NCBI RefSeq assembly: GCF_000143415.4
Contig: NW_003314386.1
Location: forward strand, 351,895-415,894
DNA from: Selaginella moellendorffii
Taxonomy: Eukaryota > Plantae > Lycopodiophyta
Reading direction: 5' to 3'
DNA length: 64,000 nucleotides
Position 1 is the stretch's first letter, and each line of letters begins with the position of its first letter. Positions 16,926 to 59,863 of this stretch are shown one piece after another. A model generated the notes under the pieces. The model did no database searches. It saw only the letters and a program-made list of their open reading frames with translations, and was not told the DNA's origin. A program made the translations under genes and the position numbers.

Positions 16926-16930
16926 AAAGG

Positions 16931-16961
<31 letters not shown>

Positions 16962-16989
16962 AAAAAAAGCAGGAGCGCCGGGTTTTTTT

Positions 16990-42539: not shown

Positions 42540-42800
42540 GTGATCCAGTTAGCATCTCTTTGATGCAAATCCCACAAAGAACATCTCCTGGCCCACGATG
42601 ATCACAGGCTATGCAATGCATGCTCGAGAGAAAAAACGAGATTGCATAACAACTCCTGCCTGAAATCTCCCATTTGACTTGTTTGACGTTATACAGACCT
42701 TGACGATGGGACCAACGTGTACGAAGCAATGACCACTGGCCCAATCGCTACCTCGCCAACCCGCTCGTCCAGATGTACGGAAGGTGTGGCCCGGGCCGGT
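42540..42800 (+). pseudogene. Degenerate PPR fragments
   Basis: ISWPTMITGYAMH and NRYLANPLVQMYGRCG occur in broken frames. Confidence 0.6.
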
Positions 42801-43028
42801 GAAGTGGCTCATCGATTGGATCTTAGTGTATGGGACCATCGCATGGAGTATGAGAGCGACGACTCTCACCGACTATGTCAAGAACATGCTCACACTGGAA
42901 TAGCCCTAAGAAAGAAAAAGAATAAACAAAAAATAACTGAAAAAAAACACTGATAAAGGTGTTTATTTCCTTAAATCGTCGTTCCCTTTTCTTATGTTGT
43001 ATATAATTCTAGGGAAGGGAAGAGAAGG

Positions 43029-43553
43029 ATGGCAATGGGTAAACGGGCGGCAGCGAGGGCGGCGATAGTATTCTTGGTGCTTGTCGTGACGCAGGCATGC
43101 GGACGTGATTACTGCTCTCTCCGCCAGGCGCGCGGCTGCGGGAACGGCACTGTTGAGGTCGAGCATGCTATGAGCGCGCACAAGTGCTTCATAGCCGATA
43201 CGGTTGTAGCTGCCACGCTCACAGATGTGCGCCGCCTCCCCAACTCGTATCTCATCCTTTTGGAGATGCCGGGCGTGACGAGCAGCAGCGATGTCAAGGT
43301 GGCGGTCTCGGGCTCTCAATTCCATCGAGTCGTGTCCATCGTTGGGATCTCTCACGAGGCGAAAGAGCGTCGCATCCTCAGGGATCGTGGCGCCTTCACC
43401 AAGATGTTTGCGCGAGAGTTTGTGCTCCCCGATGCAGTGGACGCGGAGAGGATAAGCTACCAGCTTCGCAGTGGTCTCTTGCGGGTGACGCTGCCGCTTG
43501 TCCCAGGGCTGGAGCAGCAAGAGCAGCGAGAACAAGTTGTGGAGGAGGAGTAA
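43029..43553 (+). CDS. Signal-peptide-bearing single alpha-crystallin-domain (HSP20-like) protein, family copy A
   Basis: 174-aa ORF with a signal peptide, a Cys motif and one ACD (YLILLEMPGV...FAREFVLPDAVDAERISYQLRSGLLRVTLP). TATATAA at about 43000. It is an inverted partial duplicate of 44866-45930. Confidence 0.75.
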   Translation: MAMGKRAAARAAIVFLVLVVTQACGRDYCSLRQARGCGNGTVEVEHAMSAHKCFIADTVVAATLTDVRRLPNSYLILLEMPGVTSSSDVKVAVSGSQFHRVVSIVGISHEAKERRILRDRGAFTKMFAREFVLPDAVDAERISYQLRSGLLRVTLPLVPGLEQQEQREQVVEEE

Positions 43554-43719
43554 CAGATGGGTGAGGTCGAGATATTATTTCACGGAAATTAAGTAGTTAA
43601 CTGGGATAGGAAATGTTCATAGACATAAATGTACATTTTGGGGAGTGAAGTTTGCTCCACCGGCATATGTAACCTCTTAACCAGGGTATTTAAATGCCTA
43701 ATGCCGCTGTTCTAAGCGC

Positions 43720-44095
43720 TGCCAAAGATCGAGGAGCGGGAAGCAACGTTCCCGTGCGCTCTCATGGCGCTGACGAGCAACAAGCGAGGGGACATGGACA
43801 AGATTTACGAGCTTCGGGACACGGGATATGTTTGATGAGATGCTCGTTTTGATGGAGTCTTACGCAGCTCCAATTCTCCAAGGTAAAATGATTCTTGAGC
43901 TTCAATCATTCGCAGGAGTTTTACGAGACTAAAGCAGCGGCGTGTTGTTCGTGTTGTCTTGGGAAAACATTGCTATGACAGTTTCGGAAGATCACGACCT
44001 TTGCTGGAGGAAATTGTAACAGCGCAGCTCTTGGTAAGCGTTGAGCTTTCCTTTTACGTAGCAGCTTTTCTATGATAATTGTCAACGAGGTCTGC
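43720..44095 (+). repeat. Left arm of an inverted repeat (partner about 48855-49260) containing an EF-Tu gene fragment
   Basis: Matches the reverse complement of 48855-49260, for example caggagttttacgagactaaagcagcggcg and ttgagctttccttttacgtag. Confidence 0.85.
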
Positions 44096-44319
44096 TTTAG
44101 TAGATTGGAGATGAGACTTTCATCTTATGGCGATGAGGCATTCAGAAGCTTCTGGAGCTCTGATCATGCAAGTGTTTTAAGCTTTCTTTGGTGTTTGCTC
44201 AGGTACTTAAAGTCTTTTTGCAAGTGTTTTCTCACCTTTCTTGGTTCCAAATTTTACCTCGCTTTGCCACTGGTATGTATGTCTCTTTGCGGCTACAAGC
44301 GCGTCCAGGAGAGATTTCT

Positions 44320-46260
44320 CGAGAAACACATGTCCGAGAGAATAGGAAGAGTCCTCAAGGAAGAGCTGCAGCAGCAGTGACAGCCTCTTCCTTTTCGATT
44401 CGTGCCACAGATATTGGACAGCAGCACATCTCCGGACTTATGACTGATGCCTGGTTTGCAGCGTGCTTGGCGAGCTGGATATCACTTTGCATGATCCGAG
44501 GAGTGTTTGCCACGCCAAGCTCAGCTGTCGGGCGTCTTGCTGCTGCCCGGCTCTTGCGAAGAATCGACCATGCAGTAGAAGAGGTTGGATCAGTCGGATC
44601 TCATCTGATAGACCTCTCTCCCTCGAGCTGCATCGACTGGAAGAGCGAGATAGCCGGGTTCCTGTTGGCCATGGCCTCGAAAGTTCTCTCATCATCGAGA
44701 AGAAATCCTGGAAGCATATTCGAAGAGCAAGCTGTAAACATTTATGAGGTCTGCAATAATAAACTTCAACAAATAACTTTTATAAAACTAAGAAGCAGCA
44801 ATTTAAATGTGATTTTGATTCTTGATTATGATGAAGGTTTTACAGCGTATACTGTGTCTACATATTTACCTGAAACAATACTTCGCCCTCATCCTCCCAA
44901 ACTGAACACCTTGGCATATGAAATGCTCTAACGCTTTATTCCATAGGCCCGCTATCCTTTGCCCGAGGCTTGGAACATGTTTGGGTAGCGTCACCTTGAG
45001 AAGCCCATCACTGAGATGATATGTTGCCACATCCTGCACGACACCGCGGGGGAAGTAAAGCCTGCGAGCAAACACTTTGGTGCTCGCTCCGCCCCGCTCC
45101 ACTCTCACCGCTTCTCCGCCATCATCTTCGTCTCGAGCAACGCCAGTGATCTCGAGCACAAAGCCCGACTTGTCCTCCACCCAAGCGATGTCCACGGTGG
45201 CCAACTGCGCGCCTGGCATCTCCGCGACGACCACATACGAGCCTGGACGATCCAAGATGTCCACCAATGGAGAGATGGTGACGACGCTTGAGTCGTCACC
45301 ACAATCATCTGCGTCGTTGGAGGCGAGAGCTTCAGGCCGAATGAGCCCGGCCGCGTCTGAAATGGTGCACGAGGCCGGAGGAACACGCGCGGCAGGCACC
45401 GCAAGGTACTCCTCCTCCTCCACAACTTGTTGTCGCTGCTCTCGCCCTGTTTGCTCCAGCCCTGGGACAAGCGGCAGCGTCACCCGCAAGAGACCACTGT
45501 GAAGCTGGTAGCTTATCCTTTCCGCGTCCACTGCATCGGGGAGCACAAACTCTCGCGCAAACATCTTGGTGAAGGCACCACGATCCCTGAGGATGCGACG
45601 CTCTTTCGCCTCGTGAGAGATCCCAACGATAGACACGACTCGATGGAATTGAGAGCCCGAGACCGCCACCTTGACATCGCTGCTGCTCGTCACGCCCGGC
45701 ATCTCCAAAAGGATGAGATACGAGTTGGGGAGGCGGCGCACATCTGTGAGCGTGGCAGCTACAACCGTGTCGGCTATGAAGCACTTGTGCGCGCTCATAG
45801 CGTGCTCTACCTCAACCGTGCTGTTGCCGCAGCCGCGCGCCTGGCGGAGAGAGCAGTAATCACGGCCGCACGCCTGCGCCGCGACAAGCACCAAGAATAC
45901 CATCGCCACCCTCGCTGCTGCCATCGCCATTCTTCACCCTTCTCTGCCCTAGCAACTGGACTAGGACTTATATACAAGAAAAGAAAAGGTATGAGCTCCC
46001 ACGTGGAAGGATTCGATAGCTCAAGAATTCTGAGAGTCGATCAAGGGTCAAAAACATCAAGTTAAACTAGAAACAGATCCTCACCATCTTCGTCTCCTGT
46101 TTTTGTCGACTCTTTCTTCGCTAGCGGAGAAAAAATAAATTGAAGAACGTGGTTTTCTTAATGCTCTAATCAGGAGGTGTTTAGGAAAATTTATAAATTA
46201 TTAAAAAAATTAATTTAAATGAATGCCACCCAAAAGATATACTAATGCTATTCCTTTTTG
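44320..46260. repeat. Segmental duplication unit 1 (partner about 56574-58262): GT4 3' fragment, PPR fragment, tandem-ACD gene and promoter
   Basis: Near-identical sequence to 56574-58262, differing by an internal ~270-bp inversion and indels. Confidence 0.9.
44866..45930 (-). CDS. Signal-peptide-bearing tandem (2x) alpha-crystallin-domain protein, family copy B
   Basis: 354-aa intronless ORF. Signal peptide, ACD1 as in copy A, ACD2 SPLVDILDRPGSYVVVAEMPG...ERG...FARRLYFP...LSDGLLKVTLPK. TATA at about 45970, G-box at 46000-46005. Confidence 0.85.
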   Translation of the reverse strand: MAMAAARVAMVFLVLVAAQACGRDYCSLRQARGCGNSTVEVEHAMSAHKCFIADTVVAATLTDVRRLPNSYLILLEMPGVTSSSDVKVAVSGSQFHRVVSIVGISHEAKERRILRDRGAFTKMFAREFVLPDAVDAERISYQLHSGLLRVTLPLVPGLEQTGREQRQQVVEEEEYLAVPAARVPPASCTISDAAGLIRPEALASNDADDCGDDSSVVTISPLVDILDRPGSYVVVAEMPGAQLATVDIAWVEDKSGFVLEITGVARDEDDGGEAVRVERGGASTKVFARRLYFPRGVVQDVATYHLSDGLLKVTLPKHVPSLGQRIAGLWNKALEHFICQGVQFGRMRAKYCFR

Positions 46261-46298
46261 GTTTGCTTAAGCAAACACTGAGTGGATATACCTACAAT

Positions 46299-46323
46299 AT
46301 TCTTGAATATTCTAGGATATTCT
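46299..46323. promoter_or_regulatory. Heat-shock-element-like array upstream of ACD copy B
   Basis: aTTCttGAAtaTTCtaGGAtaTTCt: three perfect alternating nGAAn units plus an extension, about 370 bp 5' of the ATG. Confidence 0.45.
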
Positions 46324-47736
46324 ACCAGCTAAAGGTTGTTATTCATTTCGATTAATTTTGTATTTATAATTTATAAGCATGTTTATAATTTATAAACTTT
46401 CTGAAACCTTTTCTTATATATTATTTTTATTTATTAATCTTGTTTACAAACATACTTATAATTATAATCTTTATTTGATCAATTGAATTAATAAGTAATA
46501 ATAACACTACTATTTAACAAACTAAATGTTGCTACATGCAACCTGTAGCAATTAAGCGCTGCCGGAATAAAGACTTGCCACCCTTTGTGAATTTGCCCCC
46601 AGCGCAATTGTCCGGATTTCTTCGTCCAAATGCACATCCTCATCAGCCAGGAGAGTGCCGCGATGCTGAAATTTGCAAGGGGAATGGAAGGTGCTCGTCC
46701 AAAGATAAAGAAGCCGATCACACCGATCCTCTACCCAGCGATCAAGGGCTGGAGTGCGCACGATTAACTTTGACCCGGTCCTCGGTCTCGGTTTTGCTCG
46801 AGAGCGTCTTTTGACTGACTGACTGCTTGTGGAGCCATCAAGAACTCATAAATCTCTCCCTCCATACTTAGGATCGAAAGAGAAGAGTTACCATTCCCGG
46901 TTCGAGTTGATCAATCTCGCTTGCGACCCTGGAAACGACGACGCACTCGATGGAAAAGAATATTGCTTCTTTCCAGGAAGAACTGGGTCTCATTGGATCA
47001 GAGCAGATGAGCTCCATTTATGGAGCTCGTCCTCTTCGGTCCCTTCTCTGTTTTACACGACCACAGCCAGGAATATCCAACTGCGCTCACTTTTGTTCGC
47101 TCTTCTTCTTCTCTTTGCGATGACAAAGCCAAAACTTGCTCCTAGGCGGTGGGGAGGGGGACTTGGACATTAGTTGCTTCACCGTGCTGGTAAGTCAGCG
47201 TCGATTCCAAACACAAAAAAGAGAGCTTTCTTTTTGGTGCAAACATCTCTCGTTGATCAGCTGCTTTGCACACCGCTGCTTCTCAATCACACTCGTCCTC
47301 CATAACCACGTCCTGTCACCCCGATACAAGAAAGGTGAAGTTAGACGAAGAGAAACTAAAGACATGTCTTCCTGTCCTCGGGCAAACTTTCCATGCCTAG
47401 AAAAATTGTTGTTGTCCAAGCAATATCTCTCAGTCACTGAAGTTCTCAAAAGGAAATCTCTTCTCTAAAAGAAAAAACCACAGACTTACCACTGGCAATG
47501 CGTCAATAGAGACTGTAGAGCGGCCGGGTGTTATAGTTTGCCGGCGTGCAAATTGCCGCTAGTCTGGCCATACACCGTGAAAAATCTCTAGCTACATTCC
47601 AATGCAAATCCCATCTATGGCGACTTACCAGGTCGGCGTCCTCGAGCCGCGAATCGTGATCCTTTGGACAGGCAATCGAATATTCTTGCTACTTGAAACC
47701 AGAGTTTTAGGGTTTTACGCCTGGGAACTTAGAAGC

Positions 47737-48159
47737 ATGGCGCTATGGAAGATCGCGGGAGGTAGTTGGAAGTCTTTTGCTTTGCGAGTTGCTGGTGTTG
47801 CTGGTGTTGCTGGCGCTGGAGTTGCCATGTACTACGGGGCTCCTAAGCTCGCATCATGTGTGGGAGAGAGCGTGATCTTGGGAAGCCAGGTGATCGGCCA
47901 GACAATGAACAAGGCTGGAGAGAGCATGGAGCGGATCTTTCAAGCTGGAGCAAGCTCTGTGGAGAAAGTGGTGCGCGTCGGGGCCGAAGCGGTCAGTGAT
48001 GGGGTCAAGGAAAGCTCCAAATCCGGCTCGGAAGCAGTGAAAGAGGCCGCGACCACTCTCGGATCGTCTTTGGAGAATGCTGCCTCCAACGTAGGCCTTG
48101 GACTCGCTGTGGCCGGACTCTTCATCGGAGCTGGGCTCGTCTTTGGGGGAAAGAAATGA
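47737..48159 (+). CDS. 140-aa Gly/Ala-rich protein with two terminal hydrophobic segments and a central amphipathic helix; function unknown
   Basis: Intact ORF with good start context (gcATGG) and a telo-box ttagggtttt about 25 bp upstream. Hydrophobic segments VAGVAGVAGAGVAMYYG and VGLGLAVAGLFIGAGLVFGGKK. Confidence 0.65.
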   Translation: MALWKIAGGSWKSFALRVAGVAGVAGAGVAMYYGAPKLASCVGESVILGSQVIGQTMNKAGESMERIFQAGASSVEKVVRVGAEAVSDGVKESSKSGSEAVKEAATTLGSSLENAASNVGLGLAVAGLFIGAGLVFGGKK

Positions 48160-48295
48160 TCGTGCCTTTCCCTTCCTCTTCTCTTTGTTTCTCTTCATCG
48201 GAGCTTTTGGGGAAAGGAATGATCGTGTCTTTCCCCTCCCTTTGTTTCCCTTCGTCGGATCTTTGGGGGATAGAAGTGCTCGTGCCTTTCCCCTC
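48119..48295 (+). repeat. Three degenerate tandem copies of a ~60-70 bp unit spanning the stop codon of the 140-aa ORF
   Basis: Unit cttc(a/g)tcgga...ttgggg(g)a..a..tg(a/c)tcgtg.ctttccc is repeated three times. Confidence 0.8.
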
Positions 48296-48854
48296 CTCCT
48301 CCTCTTTCTCTAAAGCTCAAAGCTTGGAGCTTTCCTGCCTTCTCCTCTCAATGCCCTGAGAACGAGATTCCTCGAGCTCTTGTTCGTTCTCATGTAATTT
48401 TGCTAGAGCATCAAACGAATCGAAGTTTTTGGTATGAAATTGGTCTTGTCTTGTAAAGTTGTATGGAGACGATTACTTGTGTCTTAAGATTACTGGATCA
48501 CACAGATAAACGACTGGCAGGTTTGAATTTGCTCAGCCAGAGAACGGAAGTCGTGAAAAGTTTTCGAATTCCCGATTTTCCATGCTAGTTTCTCTCAACC
48601 TGGGGGAACGAAGTTAGAAATGAACGACCAAAGCTTCGGTACCTCTCCGAGCTCGTTTTGTTTCTCTGTAACGCCCGACTTCCACGCTATAGACAATAGC
48701 CCCAACCCAAAGAAAATATACAAAGGAAAAATGAAACATACATACCAGTGGCAAACCTGTTAGCAAAAGAATGGAAGTACCTGAGCAAACACCAAAGAAA
48801 GCTTAGAACACTTACCAAAGACTCGTCTCCAATCTACCAAAGCAGCAACCATTA

Positions 48855-49260
48855 GACCTCGCTGACAATTATCATAGAAAAACTTCTACGTAAAAGGAAA
48901 GCTCAAAGCTTACCAAGAGCTCCGCAGCTACAATTTCCTCCAGTCATGATGAGCCGAAACTGTCGTAGCAATGTTTTCCCCCAGACAACACGAACAACGC
49001 TGGAAGAACCATCCGCCGCTGCTTTAGTCTCGTAAAACTCCTGCGAATGATTGAAGAATCATTTTACCTTGGAGAAGAGGCGGGTAAAACTCCATCAAAA
49101 CGAGCATCCCTCAAAGATATCACGAGATAGAAACTTTGCTGCTTAGAAGCCGCGTCCCAAAGCTCGTAAAGCTTGTTCATGTCCCCTCGCTTGATCTCCT
49201 TGCTGCTCGTCAGCGCCATGAGAGCGATCCAGACACGCTGCCAGCACTCCTCGATCTTTC
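48855..49260 (-). repeat. Right arm of the inverted repeat (partner 43720-44095) with an EF-Tu fragment
   Basis: Encodes ALMALTSSKEIKRGDMNKLYELWDA, similar to EF-Tu [28 protein letters not shown]. Confidence 0.85.
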
Positions 49261-49269
49261 TGGAAGAGC

Positions 49270-49850
49270 AACGAACACCCCGGCATTGGGCTTGCCCTCC
49301 ATCGCTGCTGCGCTTTGACCGTACTGAGCAATAGCCGCGATAATCGAACATGTCCCGCGCGGGCATTCGATCGAAGAGCTTAAGCGCCACAGCAACATCC
49401 GCGATCTGGGCATATGCAGGATGATCACGCTCCAGGCAACAAGATCGCGCTCCTGCATGGAATTCTTCCACAACTACGATGGTGGCTTACGCATGAAATC
49501 TCAAGCTGTGAGTAGCCCGAGAGGTCTTCAATTCCATCCTGTTCGGGCATTCGATCGAAGACTTTCACTGCGTCATGCAAATGCCCTGCTTGGGTAAATG
49601 CTGCTAGCATCGCATTCCCCACCACGCTGTTTCTCTCGGGCATTATGCCAAACAGATGCTTCGCCTCCTCAATCCTGTTTTGGTCAGCACACCATCACAG
49701 ACCATGCGACGATGTTCTTCGCGGGCCTTGAATCGAAGAGTTGCTTTGCCAGGAATAGATTCCCTGCTCGGGCATAGCACTGGTACAGTTGCCAAGCACA
49801 CGGCATTCCACTCTGGCATTCGATTTAATAGATTTCTCGCTTCGATCACT
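49270..49850 (-). pseudogene. Degenerate PLS-PPR fragments
   Basis: MPERNSVVGNAMLAAFTQAGHLHDAVKVFDRMP, LFDRMPARD and NRMPEWNAV occur in broken frames. Confidence 0.8.
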
Positions 49851-50026
49851 GCGACCACCTTTGTCTCTTTCAAGCCTCGAAAAGGACCGCACAACCTGAT
49901 GCTCATGAAGAATTCTAAAAAAGGAAGTTTCGAGAGATTGAATGATCACACTCGAAGGAAATGGCAATTTGAGAAAAAGAGCATATTCCTTTTTTTTTCT
50001 TTCCTTGGGCGGAGAAAGAGAAGGCG

Positions 50027-51452
50027 TCAGACGAGGCGAATGATCGAATCAGTTTCACACTGGCTGCATCATCATTAGGTTGCTTGGCTAGAGCTGCAAT
50101 CGATATGACAAACAATGGAGCAGTGAGTGATCATGACTAGGCTCCTCATGACAAGCTCTCTTGACGAGAATTCAGAAGGTGGCGAAAGTGGGAGCTCTAG
50201 GAGAAGGCACTCGATTGGTGCAATAGCTACTGAGTGAGAGTTCTCTTGGACGTTTTCAGGAGAGAACGCACTGGGAGATCTCGCTGAAGATTTTCTCTGC
50301 TCGAGAGAGATTTGTGAGAGCCCCACGATCATGGAGTTCCAGGAAATCGCAGTGTGGCACGGCATTGAATCTAACAGGTGCTGCGCTCGTTCCAGATCCC
50401 CCTGCTGCATGTAGATCACGAGGATCAATTTGCAGGACACCACGTCTCGCTCGGGCATTGAATCGAACAGCCGCTGGGCTTTGTTGTGATTGCCGCTCAG
50501 CAAGAACGCCGAGATCATCAAGTTCCGCAACACGAGATCCCGCTGCTTCATCTAGCGACTGAAGATGGTCTTGGCCTTGTCTGGATCATGTTTCAGAGTG
50601 CAGTGCTCACCAGAGGAGTGGAATCGATGATAGCTTGTGCTCGATCGACATTGCCAAGCTCGCTGTGAGCGGAAGATCAGAGAACTCACAGACACGATAT
50701 CGCCTCCTTGATCGATCCATTGTGAGAAAATCTCGCAATGAGAGTGTTCCACAACACTTAATTCTTCTCTATCATCGTGTCGAAGATCTGTCTTTCTGTT
50801 TCCAGATGCCTGGCTTAGGCATTCGCGTGAACCATAGCAGTCTAGGTAACTACATTCTATCTGAGAATGTTTCCGAAAACATTATCGGCATCTATCAAAC
50901 TATCGCTTTAAGAGTACGCCTATAACATTTTGGGCCAAGAGATCACATCTCTCTCGTCCATGGTATCAAAGAGAAGCTTCAATACTTAAACATACCCGTT
51001 CTGGGTATATGGTGTAAGCATCGCGTTCTAGGGATTAGGAGCGATCGAAAACCAATAGTGATTTAAACTTTTATGAATGAATGAGACGAGACTCTCCACG
51101 AATTTCTTAAGGTTCGTATGAGAAGAACCTCCGGGAGAAGCAGCCTTCAATCTCCTGCCTTGCTCTCCCTCCATGATCGCCCTCACTTCTCTTCCACCTC
51201 TTCTCTCGGCGCAAATCCATCCTTCCCTCCAGATCTCGAGAATTATATTCCCACGCCCTCGCCTTCCAGCACCAGCTTGGTTCGTGATTTGCTCGAACAT
51301 AGAAGGCCACCCCAGCATTGGCACTCCACACGGCAACGGCTCTCGAGCATGGAGTTCCATCCCCCTGTTGATGCGTGCTGCATGATCTCTAGCTGCGGCT
51401 CCAAGCTCACGAACAATCCTCTAGAAACCTTTGTAGAACTCCTAGAGCAGAG
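50027..51452 (-). repeat. Left arm of a ~1.4-kb inverted repeat (partner 54090-55369): chimeric UGT and PPR pseudogene fragments
   Basis: Reverse-complement match along its length. Carries a deleted UGT PSPG box (EPQLEIMQHASTGGWNSMLES..CGVPMLGWPSMFEQ; GGSSHTNLKKFV) joined to PPR repeats. Confidence 0.9.
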
Positions 51453-51459
51453 TTGTTGG

Positions 51460-53520
51460 TCATCCTGATACGATGCTACGCAGCTGATGGGAAGTTGGAT
51501 CAAGCCCAGAGAATGTTTCATCGAATGCCCGAGAAGACTGTAGTGGCATGGACTGTGATGGTTACCGCATTTACCCAGAAAGGAATTTGGATAGAAAAAA
51601 AGCGTTGTTTGGAGAGAAATCCTGTTTCTTGGGGTGCTCTAATGCAGCGCACGACCGGCTGGAAGAAGCGAAGCGTTTTTTTGATGCGATGGAGAACCCA
51701 AAAATTCACGTCTACACTGCGATGATCACTGCGTATGCCAAAGCTGGAGAAATTGAAAATGCCGAGAGGACTCTCATGCCTGAGAAGGACGTGGTCGCTC
51801 AAACTACAATGCTGCAAGCGTTTGCGCACAAGGTCTTGTCGAGAAGACAAGGAATATCTTTTATTTAATCCTTGATAAGGATGAAATGGCTTGGAACGCT
51901 ATGATCACTGCATATGCCCAAAACGGGCAAGCATTTCGTGCAAAGCAAGTGTTTGATTCCATGCCCACAAAGAGACGAAACATCGTCACTGGGAACTCGA
52001 TGCTCTCGGCGTTTAATCTCAATGGCCATCCTCACCAAGCTCTGGAGCTGCTAAAAACCATGCAGCTCGAGAGGATCAAACCAAACGAGATAGCTTTCAT
52101 GCAGCCCCATGGAGACGACGAAGAGATGCGCTGGTGGCAGATGATGGACAGTCCACAGCACCAAATCCATCATGAGAGTTCGATCGGAGGCCAAACTGGA
52201 AGAGAAACAAAAATCACAATGATTGATCCATGAAAATCTAGCAAAGAGAAAAAATCAAGAGAATTTACACGATGGCAAATGGTGGAGAGAAATCCCAATG
52301 CAATCTTGTATGCTCTGAAAGGTTTGAGGATTCAAGCCAGAAGTCTTGGTCTACACCATAGAGCTCTTTGCAAAATTGGAGCGGGGATCTCAAAATCCCA
52401 CCACACTGCCACTCTCACCCTGCATCCCACCCACTGCCATACAAGCTCCTGTGATCATCCTCCGCCCAGAGGAGTTCCACGTTCTTGCCCCAGACTCCTT
52501 TTCATGGAAAATCCTGCTCCAAGCTTACATTCACAATCGTCAGCTTCACACGTTTTTTATTCCGTGCCCGGGAAGAATGTAGTGACATGGAATGCGATTC
52601 TTTTGGCAAATGCCCAAAACTGGCAAATGTACGTCGCAAGGCTTGGGACGTAGTTTGCATGACGCTGCCTTGTTTGCTTCTGTCACTGGATTCGCGAAAG
52701 CTGGAATGATCAGCGAGGCTAGAAACCAATTTGACAACATGTCCAAGAGAGATTCTGTGTTGTGGAATGCGTTTGAGATTTTCTCGAAGCAAAGAAGCTG
52801 TTCGACAGGATGGAAAGAGATCATCAATCCAGTTTTATGGAACTCTATGATTGTTGCACGACCCCAGTTTGGAGATCTTAATGAAGCAAGAAAGTTCTTT
52901 GCGAGGATGACGCAGAGAGCTTCCGTGTCATGGGGAACACTTACCAACTCATTTGCGCAGCATGGCTGCAGTGATATAGCAAAAGAAACATTCGTGTTAT
53001 AGCGTGGACTGCAATGCTCTGACCAGACGCCCAGTGAGGTGAAACCAATCAATTACACAATCTCTTTGATTTAATGCCTCAAAGAAACCTTGTCTCGTGG
53101 ACAGTTTTCTTAGCATGGAATGCTATGATCACTGCATATGCCGAAACAGGTATGTACGCAAGGCAAAGTGCTTGTTTGGCACTATAGAAGTTCTAAAAGA
53201 ATTGCATGGTCGGAGCGTAGGGGCAAAATGGACACTTAGGACGACGCTTGGACATTGTTTAGATGCTGTTTACAGCAAACATCATGACCAGGAACGTTCT
53301 TGTCATGTAGTTTGCCCAGAATCTGTATCCATTCAGCTCTTTAAAGTCTTGAATCTGGAAGGATTCAAGAGTTTCATGGGCCTTTTGATCGCTTGCTGCC
53401 ACCTTGGGCTGGTAATCCCTGCTAGAGACTCCTTGGCTCCAATGGTTTCTGAATACAATCTAAGTCCCGAGCAAGATCACTTGCTTGATTGGTGTTGCAA
53501 GAGCTGGGCTCTTGGATGAT
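51460..53520 (+). pseudogene. Highly decayed PLS-PPR sequence forming the spacer of the inverted repeat
   Basis: Many PPR motifs (FHRMPEKTVVAWTVM, AWNAMITAYAQNG, SFMGLLIACCHLG) broken by stops and frameshifts. Confidence 0.8.
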
Positions 53521-54039
53521 GCGAAGGAGATTGGTCCATTCACACATCCTAACTTAAATTTATATATTGCCTTAAAGTTATGGTTATTTCGCATTTAATC
53601 CTTACTTTCGTACATATAACTTACCTTAAATCAAATTTATGTTAAAAACACGTCTATTTCACACATCTTAGACAAAACGTAGAAGAAAGAACAATGTCCA
53701 GTTCAGCCCATGAGTGCTGGTATCTCAAACGATCCATCAAAACCTCCTCTTTGAAAAGTTTCTTCTTTGTTTCTTGGTCTAATCATCATCCATTTATGGC
53801 GAGCGATGACAGTTCATACACCATGCTTTTGAGCCTTACATTTTTCAACACAGCCGATATTCACCAATGTTAGAGATGGATACACTTTAAGCTAAGAGTT
53901 TGATCTCCAGACAAGCAGCGAACTTAAAGAAGAACTGGATTGAAAAAAGGTTAGCCTGAGAACTCCCTTGTCTTCTCGAATTGCTGGCAGTCATGATGAA
54001 GATGCTTCCAAACGAGAGGGCCGAGCCACGATCACGCTC

Positions 54040-55369
54040 GCCTAGCCATGAGGCAGGCAAGGTTCCTTTCCTCTGGGTGATACGATCAAACTTTGCTCTA
54101 GGAGTTCTACAAAAGTTTCTAGAGGATTGTTCGTGAGGTGGGAGCCGCAGCTAGAGATCACGCAGTACGCATCAACAGGGGGATGGAACTCCATGCTCGA
54201 GAGCTTGGCGTGTGGAGTGCCAATGCTGGGGTGGCCATCTATGTTCGAGCAAAACCGAATGCCAAGCTGGTGCTGGAGGGAATAGCATTCTCGAGATCTG
54301 GAGGGAAGGATGGATTTGCGCCGAGAGAAGAGGTGGAAGAGAAAGTGAGGGCGATCATGGAGGGAGAGCAAGGCAGGAAATTGAAGGCTGCTTCTCCCCG
54401 CGATGCTTACAGCATATTCCCAGAACGGGTATGCTTAAGAATTGAAGCTTCTCTTTGATACCATGGACGAGAGAGATGTGATCTCTTCGCAATGTTAGAG
54501 GTGTATGCCAAAAACGATTGTTTGATAGACGCCGATAATGTTTTTGCAAGAATGCCCAGATAGATTGTAGTTACCTGGACTGCTATGATTAACGCAAATG
54601 CCCAAGCGGGGGATTTGCAAAAAGCGAGAGAGATCTTCGCAGAGAAGAATCTAGTGTCGTGGAACACTCTCATTGTGGGATTTGCTCACAATGGATCGAT
54701 CGAGGAGGAGATATTGTGTCTGTGAGTTCTCTGATCTTCCGCTCACAGCGAGCTTAGCAATGTCGATCGAGCGCAAGCTATCTTCAATTTCACTCCTCTG
54801 GTGAGCACCGCGCTCTGAAACACAATCCTGGTGGACAAGGCCAAGACCATCTTCGGTTGCTAGATGAAGCGGCGGGATCTCATGTCACGGAAGTCAGTGA
54901 TCTCATTGTTCTCGCCGACTGGCAATCACGATGAAGCCCAGCAGCTGTTCGATTCAATGCCCGAGCGAGATGTGGTGTCCTGCAAATTGATTCTCGTGAT
55001 CTACATGCAGCAGGGGGATCTTGAACAAGTGCAGCACCTGTTCAATTCAATACTGCACCACGATGTGATCTCCTGGAACGCCATGAGCACAGGGCTCTCG
55101 CAAATCTCTCCCGGGTGGAGAAACTCTTTGGCAAGATCCCCCAGCGTGTTCTCTCCTGAGAACGTCCAAGAGAGCTCTCACCCAGTAGTTGTTGCAATCA
55201 AGTGCCTTCTCCTCGAGCTCCCACTTTCGCCACCTTCTGAATTCTTGTCGGGAGAGTTTGTCACGAGGAGCCTGGTCACAATCACTCACTGCTCCATTGT
55301 CATAGCTCTAGCCAAACCTAATGATGATGTGGCCAGTGTGAGACTAATTTGATCATCTGCCTCATCTGA
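54040..55369 (+). repeat. Right arm of the ~1.4-kb inverted repeat: UGT and PPR pseudogene chimera
   Basis: KVPFLWVIR..RGLFVRWEPQLEI..GGWNSMLESLACGVPMLGWP..EEVEEKVRAIMEGEQG, followed by PPR repeats. Confidence 0.9.
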
Positions 55370-55939
55370 AACACTGAAGTATTGCAAGATCATGAGTGAA
55401 AAATACTTATGTGTTGTTGTGACTATGCTGCCATATCCATATGCCATAGCCAATATTGGATTAGTGATTGATAAGTTCTGCTATGGCTAAAACCCTAGAA
55501 CAATAACAGAACAAGATTGCATTGTGAAATGATCGAGATAGAGATCGAGACAGACCCTAAAACTAGGAACAAAACGATTGTTTCCATCTCCACCTTTGGC
55601 TTTAGATCGTCATGCTCCTGAGGAGGAGGAGGAGACGGAGATGGAGCCATAGGCAAAGGTGGAGGTAGAGTGGAAGTCTATTGCCACAATTTGTGTGTGG
55701 CTATGCATCATTCTTTAAAATGTCTGAATCTTAATTGTTCTAATTTAGGCAATTGTTATGTTCCTAATTTTCAATTGTTTCACGATGCAACTTGGTTTTG
55801 TTATTGTTCTAGGGTTTTGGCCATGGCAGAGCTTGATCAATCACTAATCTAACATCGGCCAAGGCTATCAATATAGCAGTGTAGTCACAACAACATGTAA
55901 GTCTTTCTCACTTGTGATCTCGCAATATTTCAGTGTTTC
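55368..55939. mobile_element. Foldback/MITE- or MULE-like element with ~200-bp terminal inverted repeats
   Basis: Ends read GAAACACTGAAGTATTGCAAGATCA... and ...TGATCTCGCAATATTTCAGTGTTTC. Arms pair over about 200 bp. No clear TSD and no transposase. Confidence 0.6.
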
Positions 55940-56094
55940 AAACGATGAATCAGTCTCACAGTAGCTGTATCAAGAATTCATAAGGTGGTGAAAGTGGGAG
56001 CTCAAGGAAAAGGCACTCAATCAGTGCAACAGCTACTGGGTGAGAGCTCTCTTGAACGTTCTCAGGAGAGAACATGCTAGGGGATCTTGCCAAA

Positions 56095-56625
56095 CCTCTC
56101 CTCATGCCTGGAAGAACCAGTTTTGGATGAGAACATCTGATGCAGCAAGATATGGAACCATATTCATCATCTTGTTGACAAAATCGAACTACGTGCTGCA
56201 TGCTGTTGTTCTCGACAAGCTCTCGCAACTCTGCTTCAAACTTTGGCTGCCCGACCCAGTCACTTCCCACGATAACAGCAAAAATTCCAGCACTAGTTTT
56301 TACGGCCTGAGCGAATGCCTTGAGGAAGAGGGCTTGGGAAGGATTTCAATCGAAGCAATGGCATTCAAGCTTCCCATTCTGGTAATCTATCGGACCACTG
56401 TGCAAATGAATTGTCTGATCAACTTTGCCTTGACAGGGTACTGCTGCCAGTGGAACGACAGAGATCGTCGTAGACGAATCCACTGGCTCGCTTCACCAAG
56501 TTGGCAAGGAAGGTGTTCTCGACTTAGCCTCCAACACTACCAAGCTCTTTCGAGATCCAAATTTGACAGAAGCGCGTCCAGGAGAGAGCAACACATGTCC
56601 GAGAGAATAGCTGCAGCAGCAGTGA
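56095..56625. pseudogene. GT4-family glycosyltransferase fragment split by an inversion
   Basis: Minus strand reads AVIVGSDWVGQPKFEAELRELV...VPYLAASDVLIQN. Plus strand reads GLGRISIEAMAFKLPIL|GTAASGTTEIVVD..GKEGV...HMSERI. Confidence 0.8.
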
Positions 56626-57000
56626 CAGACTCTTCCTTTCGATTCGTGCCACAGATATTGGACAGCAGCCCTCCGGACTTATGACTGATGCCTTGATCAT
56701 AATCAAGATCACATTTAAAGTGCTGCTACTTAATTCTATAAAAGGTTATGAGAGAAACTACAACATTTGTCTGCTAGACCTAAGAAACATTTAAAGCTTG
56801 CTCTTCGAATATGCTTCCAGGATTTCTTCTCGATGACGAGAGAACTTTCGAGGCCATGACCAACAGGAACCAAGCTCGGCTATCTCGCTCTTCCAGTCGA
56901 TGCAGCTCGAGGGAGAGAGGTCTATCAGATGAGAGCCGACTATCAGATCCAACCTCTTCTACTGCATGAAGGTTTTACAGCGTATACTCTGTCTACATAT

Positions 57001-58065
57001 TTACCTGAAACAATACTTCGCCCTCATCCTCCCAAACTGAACACCTTGGCATATGACATGCTTTAACGCTTTATTCCATAGGCCCGCTATCCTTTGCCCG
57101 AGGCTTGGAACATGTTTGGGTAGCGTCACCTTGAGAAGCCCATCACTGAGGTGATATGTTGCCACATCCTGCACGACACCGCGGGGGAAGTAAAGCCTGC
57201 GAGCAAACACTTTGGTGCTCGCTCCGCCCCGCTCTACTCTCACCGCTTCTCCGCCATCATCTTCGTCTCGAGCCACGCCAGTGAGCTCGAGCACAAAGCC
57301 CGACTTGTCCTCCACCCAAGCGATGTCCACGGTGGCCGACTGCGCGCCTGGCATCTCCGCGACGACCACGTACGAGCCTGGACGATCCAAGATGTCCACC
57401 AATGGGGAGATGGTGACGACGCTTGAGTCGTCACCACAATCATCTGCGTTGTTGGAGGCGAGAGCTTCAGGCCGAATGAGCCGGGCCGCGTCTGAAATGG
57501 TGCACGAGGCCGGAGGAACACGCGCGGCAGGCACCGCAAGGTACTCCTCCTCCACAACTCCCTGTTCTCGCTGCTCTCGCCCTGTTTGCTCCAGCCCTGG
57601 GACAAGCGGCAGCGTCACCCGCAAGAGACCACTGTGAAGCTGGTAGCTTATCCTTTCCGCGTCCACTGCATCGGGGAGCACAAACTCTCGCGCAAACATC
57701 TTGGTGAAGGCGCCCCGATCCTTGAGGATGCGACGCTCTTTTGCCTCGTGAGAGATCCCAACGATGGAGACGACTCGATGGAACTGAGAGCCCGAGACCT
57801 CCACCTTGACATCGCTGCTGCTCGTCACGCCCGGCATCTCCAAAAGGATGAGATACGAGTGCGGGAGGCGGCGCACATCTGTGAGCGTGGCAGCTACAAC
57901 CGTGTCGGCTATGAAGCACTTGTGCGCGCTCATAGCGTGCTCTACCTCAACCGTGCTGTTGCCGCAGCCGCGCGCCTGGCGGAGAGAGCAGTAATCACGG
58001 CCGCACGCCTGCGCCGCGACAAGCACCAAGAATACCATCGCCGCCCTCGCTGCCGCCAGCGCCAT
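57001..58065 (-). CDS. Signal-peptide-bearing tandem alpha-crystallin-domain protein, family copy C
   Basis: 354-aa intact ORF, about 96% identical to copy B by eye. Same TATA and G-box (58137-58142). Confidence 0.85.
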   Translation of the reverse strand: MALAAARAAMVFLVLVAAQACGRDYCSLRQARGCGNSTVEVEHAMSAHKCFIADTVVAATLTDVRRLPHSYLILLEMPGVTSSSDVKVEVSGSQFHRVVSIVGISHEAKERRILKDRGAFTKMFAREFVLPDAVDAERISYQLHSGLLRVTLPLVPGLEQTGREQREQGVVEEEYLAVPAARVPPASCTISDAARLIRPEALASNNADDCGDDSSVVTISPLVDILDRPGSYVVVAEMPGAQSATVDIAWVEDKSGFVLELTGVARDEDDGGEAVRVERGGASTKVFARRLYFPRGVVQDVATYHLSDGLLKVTLPKHVPSLGQRIAGLWNKALKHVICQGVQFGRMRAKYCFR

Positions 58066-58673
58066 TCTTCGCCCTTCTCTGCCCTAGCACCTGGACCAGG
58101 GGACTTATATACAAGAAAAGAAAAGGTATGAGCTCCCACGTGGAAGGATTCGATAGCTCAAGAATTCTGAGAAATGCTCTAATCAGGAGGTGTTTAGGAA
58201 ACTTTATTAAAAACATAATTTAAATGAATGCCACCCAAAAGATATACTTAGTGCTATTCCTTTTTTGTAATTTAATTACTCTGGAATAAACTTGATGTTG
58301 CCCTAGAGCCTAGAGATGATCTGCGTGTCTGGAGAGATCCAAACTCTTGAAATTGGAGGCTTCGTAAACTTCTATTGACGTATTGTTGTCCCAAAGATGA
58401 CGAGCTCTGAATCCTTGCAAGCTTGGAGCTGAAAATTGAAAATTCCTTGCCGATTTCCTGTGATTGAGCGTGAGAGAGGGAAAGATTACACGGAGGAACG
58501 CAACCTTTTGCCGGCGATGAGCAGGACGAAGCTTCCAGAGGAAGATCTTCCCAGCACGAATGGCGGGCGTCCATTAGAACAAATTGTTCTTCCAAGAAGG
58601 AATATGCAAAGATATTTGTCGGAATTTAGGGTTCTAGCGGGGGGTTTGGGCGGGAGGCTGTAGGCGCGAGACG

Positions 58674-59600
58674 ATGGCCGAGCTCAGCCCGACGGTCGCA
58701 GATCTAGATGGCCACAAGAATCTATTCCGGGCTCTCTCCTCAGTCGCCATGCTCGCTTCTCGCTTCGCTCTAGAAATTCTCACTGCCAAAATGCAGATCC
58801 AAGATGGACAAGATCAAGGAGCCTGGCCGGCAGAGCAAGGATCTGGAGGAGCTGCGCCAGTGCAAGAGGTCGGTCTCGCTGCCTCCTGGCTGTGCTAGCT
58901 AGAGACGCTAAAGGATGAATGCAGGCTCATGAAGGAGTTTGATAGACAGATCAAGGAGGAGTCGAAGAACCCAGCGAAGCAGCTGAATGAAAAGAAGCAG
59001 TCACTGGTAAGAGATTTTGCGAGCGATCGATCTCATCGCCTCTTGCAGATCAAGGATCTCGACTCGTATGTGGCCCTGCGCAAAACGTGAGCATTCTTTC
59101 GCCATGCCGGTGTCGCACAAGTTCTTCCCTTTTTTCCTTGGTTCCACCCAGGTACACGAGCTCGCTGGGGAACAAAAAGGCGGAGTTGACGGAAGGTGGC
59201 AGTGCCGAAGGTGCTCGCACTGACCTCACGGATCCAAATGTCAAACCAGCAACCCATGGACGCTGGGAAGAAAACTATGGACGAGACGGATCAGAAGATT
59301 GAGCGCGTAAAAAAGGTCCGATCGACGCTCAAATGACAAGTTGGCATTCTTTTCTTCCGGGATACACTGGTGGAGGATCCTGTTTTGCAGCTTGCTACCG
59401 GTAGATGCATATTGTTCTTCTTGTTCCTGGGCGCCATTGCCGTGATCGTCGTCAAGGTAAAAGCCATTCTCTTGTTCTATCCAGGAGCTCTAAATTTTCA
59501 ATGGCAGGTTGTTGATCCCAAGAAGAAGAACATCTGCGGCCTTCCCGGATTATCTCCCCTCGCGAACACCAGCCAGATTCTTTTCAACCGGCGGATATGG
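58674..59600 (+). pseudogene. NPSN (novel plant SNARE)-like gene, internally deleted and frameshifted
   Basis: MAELSPTVADLDG..LFRALS; MDKIKEPGRQSKDLEEL; ECRLMKEFDRQIKEE..KQLNEKKQSL|IKDLDSYVALRK; KTMDETDQKIERVKK; RCILFFLFLGAIAVIVVK|VVDPKKKNI.GLPGL. Most of the SNARE motif is missing. Confidence 0.75.
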
Positions 59601-59863
59601 GAGTTTCTCTTCCTACTGTCCGAGTCCTTATGGCAAAGCAAAGGTCTGTATTATGTCTTATGATGATTGAATCTTATCAAAAAATTTGCTGTTTACAGGT
59701 GCAGGAGTTATCGTGCTTCTTGTGCTTTTGTCACAAGCTGAAGGGCACTTTGTGTCGCTCGATAATTCCTTCAGTTGCAAGACATGTACGAGCTCCGTGG
59801 TAATATTCAAGAGTATGGTAATGTGATTATTTGAGATTTTGTTGTAAGTGTTTGTTTTTTCAG

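What the first reader, a model, noticed from the sequence alone, without database searches (positions are those of the whole stretch)
43029..58065. Three-copy family of secretory-pathway, Cys-containing tandem alpha-crystallin-domain proteins
Seen: two intact intronless 354-aa ORFs (44866-45930, 57001-58065) and one of 174 aa (43029-43553). Each has an N-terminal signal peptide, a Cys-rich leader (ACGRDYCSLRQARGCG..HKC) and an N-glycosylation sequon kept despite substitution (NST in B/C, NGT in A). Copies B and C have two ACDs, each preceded by Cys residues, and no K/HDEL-type signal. The ORFs stay open while surrounding duplicated DNA is decayed. Known: land-plant ER sHSPs usually have one ACD, an ER-retention tetrapeptide and few Cys. 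The motifs here (P.VDI....YVVVAEMPG; L.DGLL.VTLPK) look closer to microbial Hsp20s than to plant class I/II sHSPs (DW.ETP.AH, MENGVL). Inference: a lineage-specific, possibly secreted or vacuolar, disulfide-bonded pseudo-dimeric ACD chaperone family, perhaps of microbial origin.
Basis: partly seen in the sequence, partly recalled or inferred. Interest (0 to 1): 0.8.

Follow-up and report, generated by a model that had tools for sequence, protein, structure and literature searches.

The report
Selaginella secretory double alpha-crystallin proteins

Summary
The window is Selaginella moellendorffii scaffold GL377690.1. It has two intact intronless 354-aa ORFs (B 44866-45930, C 57001-58065, both on the minus strand) and a truncated 174-aa copy (A 43029-43553).

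B and C each encode, in order:
- a signal-peptide-like N-terminus with an AQA|C cleavage motif;
- a 4-Cys leader with an NST sequon;
- ACD1, a roughly 55-residue low-confidence linker with 2 Cys, and ACD2;
- a helical 2-Cys tail with no H/KDEL.

B and C are intact in both haplotypes. Transcript-like contigs from four studies cover the ORF but none of the silent flanks. dN/dS is 0.16-0.46. Two unlinked intronless paralogs, about 50% identical, share the whole architecture.

The two ACDs arose by an internal duplication: they are 35% identical (E 4e-15) and form one clade. No comparable protein from another organism appeared among 1.8 billion cluster representatives.

- ACD1's best named matches are plant class II sHSPs, so a microbial origin has no positive support.
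- The clean ORFs in decayed flanks reflect recent copying or gene conversion as well as selection.
- A is a truncated copy, and a fourth copy just outside the window is frameshifted.
- AlphaFold gives no confident ACD1-ACD2 packing.

The scan noted this family before on another piece of the same genome (s1-368830). This is a new variant of a known kind, of moderate interest.

The parts
44866..45930 (-). Copy B: intact intronless 354-aa ORF (identical to the first 354 aa of SELMODRAFT_430190). Encodes signal peptide, Cys leader, ACD1, linker, ACD2 and tail.
   Evidence: Its allele is intact on the other haplotype with the same stop (L005 8001-9059). Covered by transcript-like contigs.
45871..45930 (-). 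B residues 1-20: predicted cleavable signal peptide (n-region MAMAAAR, 11-residue h-region, AQA|C).
   Evidence: heuristics only. The same pattern occurs in the ~50%-identical paralogs P0006 and P0154.
45769..45870 (-). B residues 21-54: leader with 4 Cys (21, 26, 34, 50) and the NST sequon at 36.
   Evidence: There is no amino-acid variation here among the four intact copies and alleles, against 2 synonymous changes.
45451..45768 (-). B residues 55-160: ACD1.
   Evidence: Pfam HSP20. pLDDT 83-97 outside the beta5-beta7 loop. Best solved relative is pea class II HSP17.7, 5DS1, E 1e-7.
45289..45450 (-). B residues 161-214: acidic linker with Cys188 and Cys210, modelled with low confidence.
   Evidence: pLDDT below 50 for residues 168-210. 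It is among the least conserved regions between paralogs, at 28-36% identity.
44965..45288 (-). B residues 215-322: ACD2.
   Evidence: Second HSP20 stretch. 35% identical to ACD1, E 4e-15, including the preceding Cys and the following LPxVPxL. pLDDT 78-91.
44866..44964 (-). B residues 323-354 plus stop: C-terminal tail with a predicted helix (322-345), Cys339 and Cys352, ending KYCFR. No H/KDEL.
   Evidence: The start of the tail (VPSLW...) is conserved in the paralogs. Contigs run collinearly through the stop codon.
57001..58065 (-). Copy C: intact intronless 354-aa ORF, 96% identical to B. Its allele is P0002 / SELMODRAFT_419652.
43029..43553 (+). Copy A: inverted, truncated duplicate of 174 aa (signal peptide, leader and ACD1 only). 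The duplication breakpoint is at about 43552 and the G-box promoter element is missing.
   Evidence: No A-specific contigs were found.
44831..46035 (.). The 1.2-kb high-identity (97%) duplication unit of B (ORF plus 35 bp 3' and 105 bp 5'). Its partner is at 56966-58172.
56966..58172 (.). The matching duplication unit of C.
45968..46006 (-). Proximal promoter of B: TATATAA at -44 and a palindromic G-box (CCACGTGG) at about -75. The equivalent region in C is about 58105-58143.
   Evidence: The G-box is also present in the B allele and in copy D. Contig 5' ends at 45922-45954 fit this TATA.
46295..46322 (-). Heat-shock-element-like array (GAAnnTTCnnGAA, one perfect 3-unit match with extensions) about 380 bp upstream of B only.
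   Evidence: It is conserved in the B allele, absent or weak in C, A, D, P0006 and P0154, and only weakly above chance.

Best explanation

Shown:
- The genes are intronless, intact in both haplotypes, covered by transcript-like contigs and under purifying selection.
- The architecture (signal-peptide-like N-terminus, Cys leader, ACD1, low-confidence Cys-bearing linker, ACD2, Cys-bearing helical tail, no H/KDEL) is shared by three unlinked subfamilies that are about 50% identical.
- The two ACDs descend from one internal duplication of a unit made of a Cys, an ACD and an LPxVPxL motif. That duplication predates the split of the subfamilies.
- The local cluster grew by recent duplication or gene conversion of a 1.2-kb gene unit, which also left a truncated copy (A) and a frameshifted copy (D).

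Inferred:
- The N-terminus is cleaved after AQA and the roughly 36-kDa protein enters the ER.
- There the sequon may be glycosylated, and the eight Cys, all outside the ACD cores, may form disulfides that staple the leader, linker and tail.
- The two canonical non-metazoan-type ACDs keep the AExPG, FxRxFxLP and GxLxVTLPK motifs. They are inferred to act as an ATP-independent holdase in the ER lumen or, since there is no retention signal, further along the pathway in the vacuole or apoplast.
- The conserved proximal G-box and the lack of proximal heat-shock elements suggest bZIP-type (ABA, dehydration or light) control rather than classical HSF control.
For: - Identity and intactness. Alleles are intact with the same stop codon.
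- Expression: contigs of four runs from four studies lie only on 44831-45954. The flanks within the laid stretch (42800-43041, 43526-44130 and 45946-46400) have essentially zero depth, which argues that these runs are RNA rather than DNA. The contigs are collinear, with no intron. A loose end at 45050 matches the paralog LOC112343048 with 1 mismatch in 30, so that subfamily is represented in three of these runs too.
- Selection: Nei-Gojobori dN/dS for B-C is 0.27 (14 synonymous against 12 non-synonymous changes; binomial p 0.0013). It is 0.16-0.46 among recent copies and 0.43-0.49 among deep paralogs, where dS is about 0.9-1.2. The leader has no amino-acid change among the four intact copies.
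- Conserved architecture in P0006 and P0154, both intronless.
- Internal duplication.
- ACD fold: pLDDT is mostly above 85 in both cores, and Foldseek's best target-normalised score is 0.83, to the pea class II core.
- Lineage restriction.
- Promoter.
Against: - The signal peptide was judged by rules of thumb only. No SignalP or DeepLoc was available, and there is no localisation, glycosylation or disulfide evidence.
- The runs are only guessed to be RNA. The contigs are 95-99% like B, so they may come from C, from alleles or from both.
- dN/dS of 0.2-0.45 is relaxed compared with classical sHSPs, and the counts are small.
- No canonical C-terminal IxI motif was recognised, and AlphaFold does not pack the two ACDs (pTM 0.45-0.47). 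Chaperone-type assembly is therefore unproven.
- Orthologs in other lycophytes that are 50% or more identical would be hidden inside the 50% clusters of the representative library, and other Selaginella genomes may not be in the protein databases at all.
Confidence: 0.7

Rival explanations
1. The proteins are ACD-containing but not chaperones. They would be secreted, cell-wall or vacuolar binding or structural proteins that use the ACD beta-sandwich as a scaffold, as the plant ACD proteins RTM2 and IDM2/ROS5 do in the cytosol and nucleus.
For: The Cys-bearing leader, linker and tail are unlike sHSP N- and C-terminal regions. No IxI motif was recognised. dN/dS is relaxed (0.2-0.5). The family turns over quickly, with truncated and frameshifted copies, as is typical of defence or secreted families. 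There are no proximal heat-shock elements.
Against: Both ACDs keep the canonical sHSP signature motifs, and they are the most conserved parts of the protein (56-68% identity, against 24-36% for linker and tail). The best matches are genuine sHSPs.
Confidence: 0.2
2. The family was acquired from a microbe by horizontal transfer.
For: In the ACD tree the nearest outgroups are unnamed metagenomic proteins, one of them labelled IbpA. ACD2's best solved match is a Xylella sHSP. The genes are intronless.
Against: - ACD1's best named matches are plant class II sHSPs from wheat, a fern and Kingdonia, plus pea 5DS1.
- Both ACDs form one clade, and a tree joining them to plant class II sHSPs is not rejected (p-AU 0.22).
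- From general knowledge, plant cytosolic sHSP genes are also usually intronless.
- Three unlinked subfamilies with dS of about 1 and uniform GC3 (0.66-0.70) show long residence in the genome.
- The signal peptide, TATA box and G-box are eukaryotic features.
Confidence: 0.08
3. The hydrophobic N-terminus is an uncleaved signal anchor or an organellar targeting sequence, so the protein is membrane-tethered or organellar rather than soluble in the secretory pathway.
For: No dedicated predictor was run. AlphaFold models residues 4-19 as a helix.
Against: The h-region is only 11-13 residues, too short for a membrane span. It is followed by a small-x-small motif (AQA|C, VAA|C) in all three subfamilies. 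It has no Ser/Thr-rich or amphipathic transit-peptide character. Cys and N-x-S/T follow immediately.
Confidence: 0.07
4. The copies in this window are decaying duplicates, and their open frames are only a by-product of very recent copying or gene conversion.
For: The B/C unit is only 1.2 kb at 97% identity, with dS 0.056. Copy A is truncated and copy D is frameshifted, and there is another decayed copy (L006). The allelic comparison C-Cal is not significant on its own (p 0.1).
Against: There is an excess of synonymous change in several comparisons (p 0.0013 down to 1e-5). B and C are intact in both haplotypes. Transcript-like contigs cover them. Deep paralogs with dS of about 1 still keep the full architecture at dN/dS of about 0.45.
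Confidence: 0.05

Closest known systems
Plant ER-localised small heat shock proteins (class IV/ER sHSPs, for example Arabidopsis HSP22.0-ER, Phaseolus Nodulin 22 in PMC9783675, wheat TaHSP23.9 in PMC7069362)
   Same: An N-terminal signal peptide followed by a non-metazoan-type alpha-crystallin domain, with the presumed site of action in the secretory pathway. The Atlas feature search lists a '22.0 kDa class IV' cluster among its weak leads.
   Different: Those have one ACD, a C-terminal ER-retention tetrapeptide and no Cys-rich leader (general knowledge). Here there are two ACDs, eight Cys outside the cores and the ending ...KYCFR. No specific sequence affinity to the ER class was shown.
Plant cytosolic class II sHSPs (pea HSP17.7 core, PDB 5DS1; wheat HSP17)
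   Same: They are the best named sequence matches to ACD1 (E 1e-7, 33-38% identity) and give the best fold superposition (target-normalised TM 0.83). Both are intronless.
   Different: They are single-ACD cytosolic proteins with no signal peptide and assemble through an IxI motif. The phylogenetic link is not rejected but also not supported (p-AU 0.22).
Metazoan multi-ACD sHSPs (Taenia Tsp36, PDB 2BOL; annelid double-ACD sHSPs in PMC13226371 and PMC9075518; crustacean multi-ACD proteins)
   Same: Two or more ACDs in one polypeptide, arising by internal duplication.
   Different: They have an independent origin and metazoan-type ACDs, and PMC13226371 does not mention a signal peptide for the annelid proteins. 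Superposition on Tsp36 over both domains is poor (TM about 0.2, rmsd 18.5 A). The crustacean hits (Homarus, 2415 aa, 8 matched stretches) match only at the single-ACD level.
Plant proteins with two HSP20 domains noted in genome surveys (for example foxtail millet SisHSP-28, PMC5009299)
   Same: Two HSP20 domains in a plant protein.
   Different: It is only listed as an exception in a survey. No signal peptide or Cys pattern is described and no relationship was tested. Nothing similar from seed plants appeared as a two-stretch match near the top of the HMMER list.

Membership tests
Alpha-crystallin/HSP20 domain superfamily (Pfam PF00011) | Significant match to the HSP20 profile. | tested here: met
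   68.7 bits (B) and 68.5 bits (C) against a cut-off of 20.8, with two stretches each; A scores 40.8 bits with one stretch.
Alpha-crystallin/HSP20 domain superfamily (Pfam PF00011) | ACD beta-sandwich fold. | tested here: met
   AlphaFold cores have pLDDT mostly above 85. Foldseek matches sHSP structures at E down to 1e-6, with target-normalised TM up to 0.83.
Canonical small heat shock protein | A single ACD flanked by a variable N-terminal region and a C-terminal extension. | tested here: not met
   Two ACDs per chain.
Canonical small heat shock protein | A C-terminal I/V-x-I/V motif that drives oligomer assembly. | tested here: inconclusive
   By eye there is no clear IxI after either ACD. 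Both are followed instead by a conserved LPxVPxL. Oligomerisation was not testable.
Canonical small heat shock protein | ATP-independent holdase activity and stress induction. | not testable with these tools
   Only the presence of contigs in four runs is known.
Plant ER (class IV) sHSP | N-terminal signal peptide. | tested here: inconclusive
   The n-h-c pattern and the -3/-1 rule are met in all three subfamilies, but no dedicated predictor was available.
Plant ER (class IV) sHSP | C-terminal ER-retention tetrapeptide (H/KDEL-like). | tested here: not met
   The C-termini are YCFR, CILY and TILR.
Plant ER (class IV) sHSP | Single ACD that groups with the ER class in phylogeny. | tested here: not met
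   There are two ACDs.
Tsp36/p40-type tandem-ACD sHSP | Two ACDs in one chain. | tested here: met
Tsp36/p40-type tandem-ACD sHSP | Metazoan-type ACDs and a Tsp36-like domain arrangement, implying common descent. | tested here: not met
   TM is about 0.2 over 297 columns against 2BOL. The best matches to the individual ACDs are plant, bacterial and yeast sHSPs. The six Selaginella ACDs form a clade of their own.

The most novel reading that the evidence does not exclude
These proteins are genuinely exported, to the apoplast or the vacuole, as disulfide-stapled tandem-ACD holdases. That would make them an extracellular or post-ER small-heat-shock-type chaperone in a land plant, invented in the Selaginella lineage by internal ACD duplication. 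The G-box promoter would tie them to dehydration or ABA responses rather than to the HSF heat-shock circuit.
Probability: 0.25. Interest if true: 0.65.

Novelty: new variant of a known kind. Interest (0 to 1): 0.42.

Why it matters
Plants stand out for having sent small heat shock proteins into many compartments, but the known secretory-pathway form is a single-domain, ER-retained protein. A family that combines a signal peptide, two alpha-crystallin domains in one chain, conserved cysteines outside the domains and no retention signal would extend that repertoire. It would give a second, independent example of the multi-ACD design known from flatworms, annelids and crustaceans. It would also offer a tractable case for two questions: how ACD proteins work in an oxidising, ATP-poor compartment, and whether a covalently linked ACD pair replaces the usual dimer. 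The practical weight is limited. The family is known from one species, its function is untested, and the proteins are already in GenBank as hypothetical 'SHSP domain-containing' proteins with faulty gene models.

Tried and rejected
- Word-indexed homolog searches with ACD1 alone and ACD2 alone returned only the decayed paralog P0005. They added no named single-ACD relatives.
- Literature searches for the locus tags, for Selaginella sHSPs and for plant tandem-ACD proteins found nothing on this family.
- The AU test on the full 132-row tree did not finish in two 300-s runs. It was replaced by a 46-row subset under LG+G4.
- The Foldseek/ESM-Atlas shape search gave only single-ACD matches and a weak PIH1/CS hit. 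There was no two-domain analogue.
- The Atlas feature search gave only sub-threshold leads (0.86) to plant 'Small_heat_shock_put' clusters. These were not pursued.
- A truncated-construct AlphaFold run (residues 45-330), meant to test intramolecular ACD pairing, gave pTM 0.47 and no beta6 strands, so it neither supports nor refutes pairing. Coordinates and PAE are not returned, so disulfide geometry could not be examined.
- Heat-shock-element scan: matches in the window are at chance level (33 against 29 expected). Only B and its allele have a perfect distal element, so classical HSF control was not adopted as the reading.
- The GenBank gene models (473, 362, 505 and 326 aa) were rejected as products. 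They add artificial introns or read into PPR debris, whereas the genomic ORFs of B, C and both alleles stop at the same CFR* and contigs run collinearly through that stop.
Full report
**What is there.** Pfam HSP20/alpha-crystallin (PF00011) matches B and C with two separate stretches each (68.7 and 68.5 bits against a cut-off of 20.8). It matches A with one stretch (40.8 bits). B and C are 96% identical, and A matches their first 171 residues at 93-95%.

A word-indexed protein search identified the source. B is 100% identical to the first 354 residues of SELMODRAFT_430190 of Selaginella moellendorffii, and the four other hits are also S. moellendorffii 'SHSP domain-containing' hypothetical proteins.

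**Genomic setting and copy census.**
- The window lies on scaffold GL377690.1.
- Scaffold GL377608.1 is the other haplotype. It is collinear with the window at 96-99% identity over long stretches.
- That haplotype carries intact alleles of B (L005 8001-9059) and C (L001 10001-11065), which end at the same ...KYCFR stop. It also carries an allele of A that ends differently, at 183 aa.
- A fourth copy, D (SELMODRAFT_430197), lies about 3.2 kb beyond the right end of the window. It reads out of frame after about codon 128, and its GenBank model hides this with an artificial intron.
- A further decayed copy lies on GL377646.1 (L006).
- The deposited models of 473, 362, 505 and 326 aa are artefacts. 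They splice away the stop codon or a frameshift, and one runs into PPR-like debris.

**The duplication.** Self-comparison of the window shows that B and C share a 1.2-kb unit at 97% identity (44831-46035 against 56966-58172). The unit is the ORF plus 35 bp on the 3' side and 105 bp on the 5' side. Outside it there are only short, partly inverted patches at 78-88% identity.

A matches B and C only from 44 bp upstream of the ATG to position 43552, so it is a truncated, inverted duplicate.

Synonymous divergence between B and C is only 0.056, about twice the allelic value of 0.027-0.040. The contrast between 'clean' ORFs and 'decayed' flanks is therefore best explained by recent copying or gene conversion of the gene unit, with selection acting on top of that.

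**Selection.** Nei-Gojobori estimates are as follows.

| Comparison | dN/dS | Synonymous / non-synonymous changes | One-sided binomial p against neutrality |
|---|---|---|---|
| B-C | 0.27 | 14 / 12 | 0.0013 |
| B-Cal | 0.16 | 17 / 9 | 1e-5 |
| Bal-Cal | 0.20 | 17 / 11 | 5e-5 |
| B-Bal (alleles) | 0.38 | 10 / 12 | 0.026 |
| C-Cal (alleles) | 0.46 | 7 / 10 | 0.1 |

'Bal' and 'Cal' are the alleles of B and C on the other haplotype. Among the four intact copies and alleles, the 34-residue Cys leader has two synonymous changes and no amino-acid change. This is purifying selection, although it is relaxed compared with typical housekeeping chaperones.

**Expression.** The runs returned by the sequence-run index have contig totals of 20-35 Mb and are only guessed to be RNA. 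I laid four of them, from four studies, on window 42800-46400 (3601 letters, within the operators' limit).

- All four cover about 44831-45954, and the flanks within the laid stretch at 42800-43041, 43526-44130 and 45946-46400 have essentially zero depth. Genomic DNA would not give this pattern, so the family is very probably transcribed.
- The contigs are collinear with the genome from about 24 nt upstream of the ATG through the stop codon. No intron is seen, and the C-terminal tail is part of the mRNA.
- The contigs are 95-99% like B. Some carry C-type or allele-type features: a CGC codon insertion, and a junction matching the inverted 3' flank of C. Individual copies therefore cannot be told apart.
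- No A-specific contig was seen.
- A recurrent 'loose end' at 45050 in three runs matches the paralog LOC112343048 (L004, from 6972) with one mismatch in 30. That subfamily is therefore represented in the same runs.

**Wider family.** HMMER against 1.84 billion cluster representatives found only five proteins with E of 1e-10 or better. These were the query's own cluster, the decayed P0005, P0006 (SELMODRAFT_427722, 375 aa, 52% identical over the full length), P0007 and a lobster multi-ACD protein. P0007 is a fragment cluster that includes the RefSeq protein XP_024521633, 391 aa.

All other hits are generic sHSP matches (E of 2e-9 or weaker, about 25-45% identity over one ACD), apart from the lobster protein and a few other crustacean multi-ACD proteins that match through single ACDs.

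P0006 and XP_024521633 are intronless genes on two further scaffolds. They share the entire layout:
- a hydrophobic N-terminus with a small-x-small site (AQA|C, VAA|C);
- an ARGCG motif;
- a Cys a few residues before ACD1, and a Cys before ACD2;
- an LPK-x-VPSLW motif after ACD2;
- a Cys-containing tail without H/KDEL.

Identity to B is highest in the ACDs (56-68%) and lowest in the linker and tail (24-36%). dS among the subfamilies is about 0.9-1.2 with dN/dS 0.43-0.49, so the architecture is old within this lineage.

One caveat applies. Orthologs in other species that are at least 50% identical would be hidden inside these clusters. The 90%-cluster word search found none, but its reach at about 50% identity is poor, since it missed P0006.

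**Origin of the two domains.** ACD1 and ACD2 of B align at 35% identity (E 4e-15). The alignment extends over the preceding Cys (HKC against DDC), the shared GA(F/S)TK(M/V)FAR segment and the following LP-x-VP-x-L-x-Q.

In maximum-likelihood trees with 126 or 40 other ACDs, the six Selaginella ACDs form one clade (SH-aLRT 92 and 84). ACD1 and ACD2 are each monophyletic within it (96). This means one internal duplication before the subfamilies split.

The outgroup cannot be resolved.
- The nearest rows are unnamed metagenomic proteins, one of them labelled IbpA.
- The best named matches of ACD1 are plant sequences: wheat class II HSP17 (E 1e-7), a fern and Kingdonia, and the pea class II core 5DS1 (E 1e-7).
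- ACD2's best solved matches are a Xylella sHSP (4e-6) and pea class I (4e-5).
- Forcing the clade together with the three named plant sequences is not rejected (p-AU 0.22).

There is thus no positive evidence for a microbial origin. The uniform GC3 (0.66-0.70), the three dispersed and diverged loci and the eukaryotic promoter features all fit a long plant residence.

**Structure.** AlphaFold2 on the full protein gives mean pLDDT 70.8 and pTM 0.45.
- Both ACD cores are confident, with 10-residue blocks at 83-97 and 78-91.
- The beta5-beta7 loops, of 14 and 17 residues, are of low confidence and show no beta6 strand.
- The signal peptide, the leader and the linker (168-210) are mostly below 50.
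- A C-terminal helix (322-345) scores about 80.

A construct trimmed to residues 45-330 gives the same picture, with pTM 0.47. Foldseek matches plant, bacterial, yeast and archaeal sHSP cores; the highest target-normalised TM, 0.83, is to the pea class II core. Superposition on the tandem-ACD Tsp36 is poor (TM about 0.2).

The domains are therefore genuine non-metazoan-type ACDs. Whether they pair within the chain is not shown, and coordinates and PAE were not available to inspect the cysteines.

**Targeting features (sequence-based only).** The first in-frame start codon after an upstream stop is the ATG at 45930. Its sequence context is favourable (A at -3, G at +4). A TATATAA lies 44 nt upstream, and the contig 5' ends lie between it and the ATG.

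The N-terminus has a basic n-region, an 11-13-residue h-region (mean Kyte-Doolittle 2.7-3.5) and an AxA-type site. That h-region is too short for a membrane anchor.

Mature B would be about 36 kDa with pI about 6. It has eight Cys, all outside the ACD cores, and one NST sequon. XP_024521633 keeps that sequon position as NAT, but SELMODRAFT_427722 does not. These features fit ER entry and oxidative folding. The final compartment is unknown.

**Regulation hints.**
- A palindromic G-box (CCACGTGG) sits about 30 bp upstream of the TATA box in B, C, the B allele and D. ACGT-core elements occur in the proximal promoters of the two deep paralogs.
- Heat-shock-element matches in the window are at chance level. 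Only B and its allele have a perfect distal array, at about -380.

This suggests bZIP-type rather than classical HSF control, but it is only a lead.

**Comparison with what is known.** The closest functional analogue is the plant ER sHSP class. Two of its defining features (a single ACD and a retention tetrapeptide) are tested here and not met. The multi-ACD design is known in flatworms, annelids and crustaceans and arose independently here. One plant survey notes a two-HSP20-domain protein in foxtail millet without further study.

No paper in the searchable library mentions these Selaginella genes. The scan itself noted the same family on another piece of this genome (s1-368830), and I found the allelic cluster there.

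**Verdict.** It is best described as a new, so far Selaginella-specific variant of the sHSP/ACD family: a secretory, Cys-bearing, internally duplicated ACD protein. The chaperone mechanism, the disulfides, the glycosylation and the destination are inferences. Interest is moderate.

Noticed in passing
window 58674-62295 (+), and L004 3256-5188: A Peptidase_C14 (metacaspase-like) gene lies about 600 bp from copy C, transcribed divergently. In the window's copy the product also has a HisKA hit on record. A paralogous Peptidase_C14 gene (38-66% identity in tblastx patches) lies about 800 bp upstream of the deep paralog LOC112343048. Two of the three tandem-ACD loci thus neighbour a metacaspase-like gene, in different orientations.
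   Followed up: partly
window 45999-46006 and about 58136-58143; also L005 and L002: A palindromic G-box (CCACGTGG) lies about 30 bp upstream of the TATA box in B, C, the B allele and the frameshifted copy D. It is partly deleted in the C allele.
   Followed up: partly
window 50027-51025 against 54399-55369, and ORFs at 50075-53052 and 54864-55352: Between B and C lies an inverted repeat (83% identity) of PPR-like coding debris. Several broken PPR-type ORFs indicate decayed pentatricopeptide-repeat gene copies. GenBank model SELMODRAFT_444398 fuses such debris to the ACD gene.
   Followed up: no
L003 10736-11147: A second, partial tandem-ACD-like stretch (matching B residues 116-270 at 44-54% identity) lies about 3.6 kb downstream of SELMODRAFT_427722, inside the range annotated as an HMA P-type ATPase gene on the other strand.
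   Followed up: no
P0008, P0009, P0010, P0044, P0076: Very long proteins with 4-9 ACD-like stretches turned up as hits. One from Homarus americanus is 2415 aa and one from Eriocheir sinensis is 1236 aa; both are annotated 'serine-rich adhesin for platelets-like'. They are giant multi-ACD proteins in crustaceans.
   Followed up: no
window 14001-18000: A marked AT-rich block (GC 0.30-0.36, against about 0.48 for the window).
   Followed up: no
window 44131-44735: Two of the four runs also have contigs downstream of B (44131-44372 and 44494-44735). One contig shows a 54-bp replacement at 44208-44263. This is transcribed debris or the 3' UTR of the C-type copy, whose flank is inverted relative to B.
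   Followed up: partly
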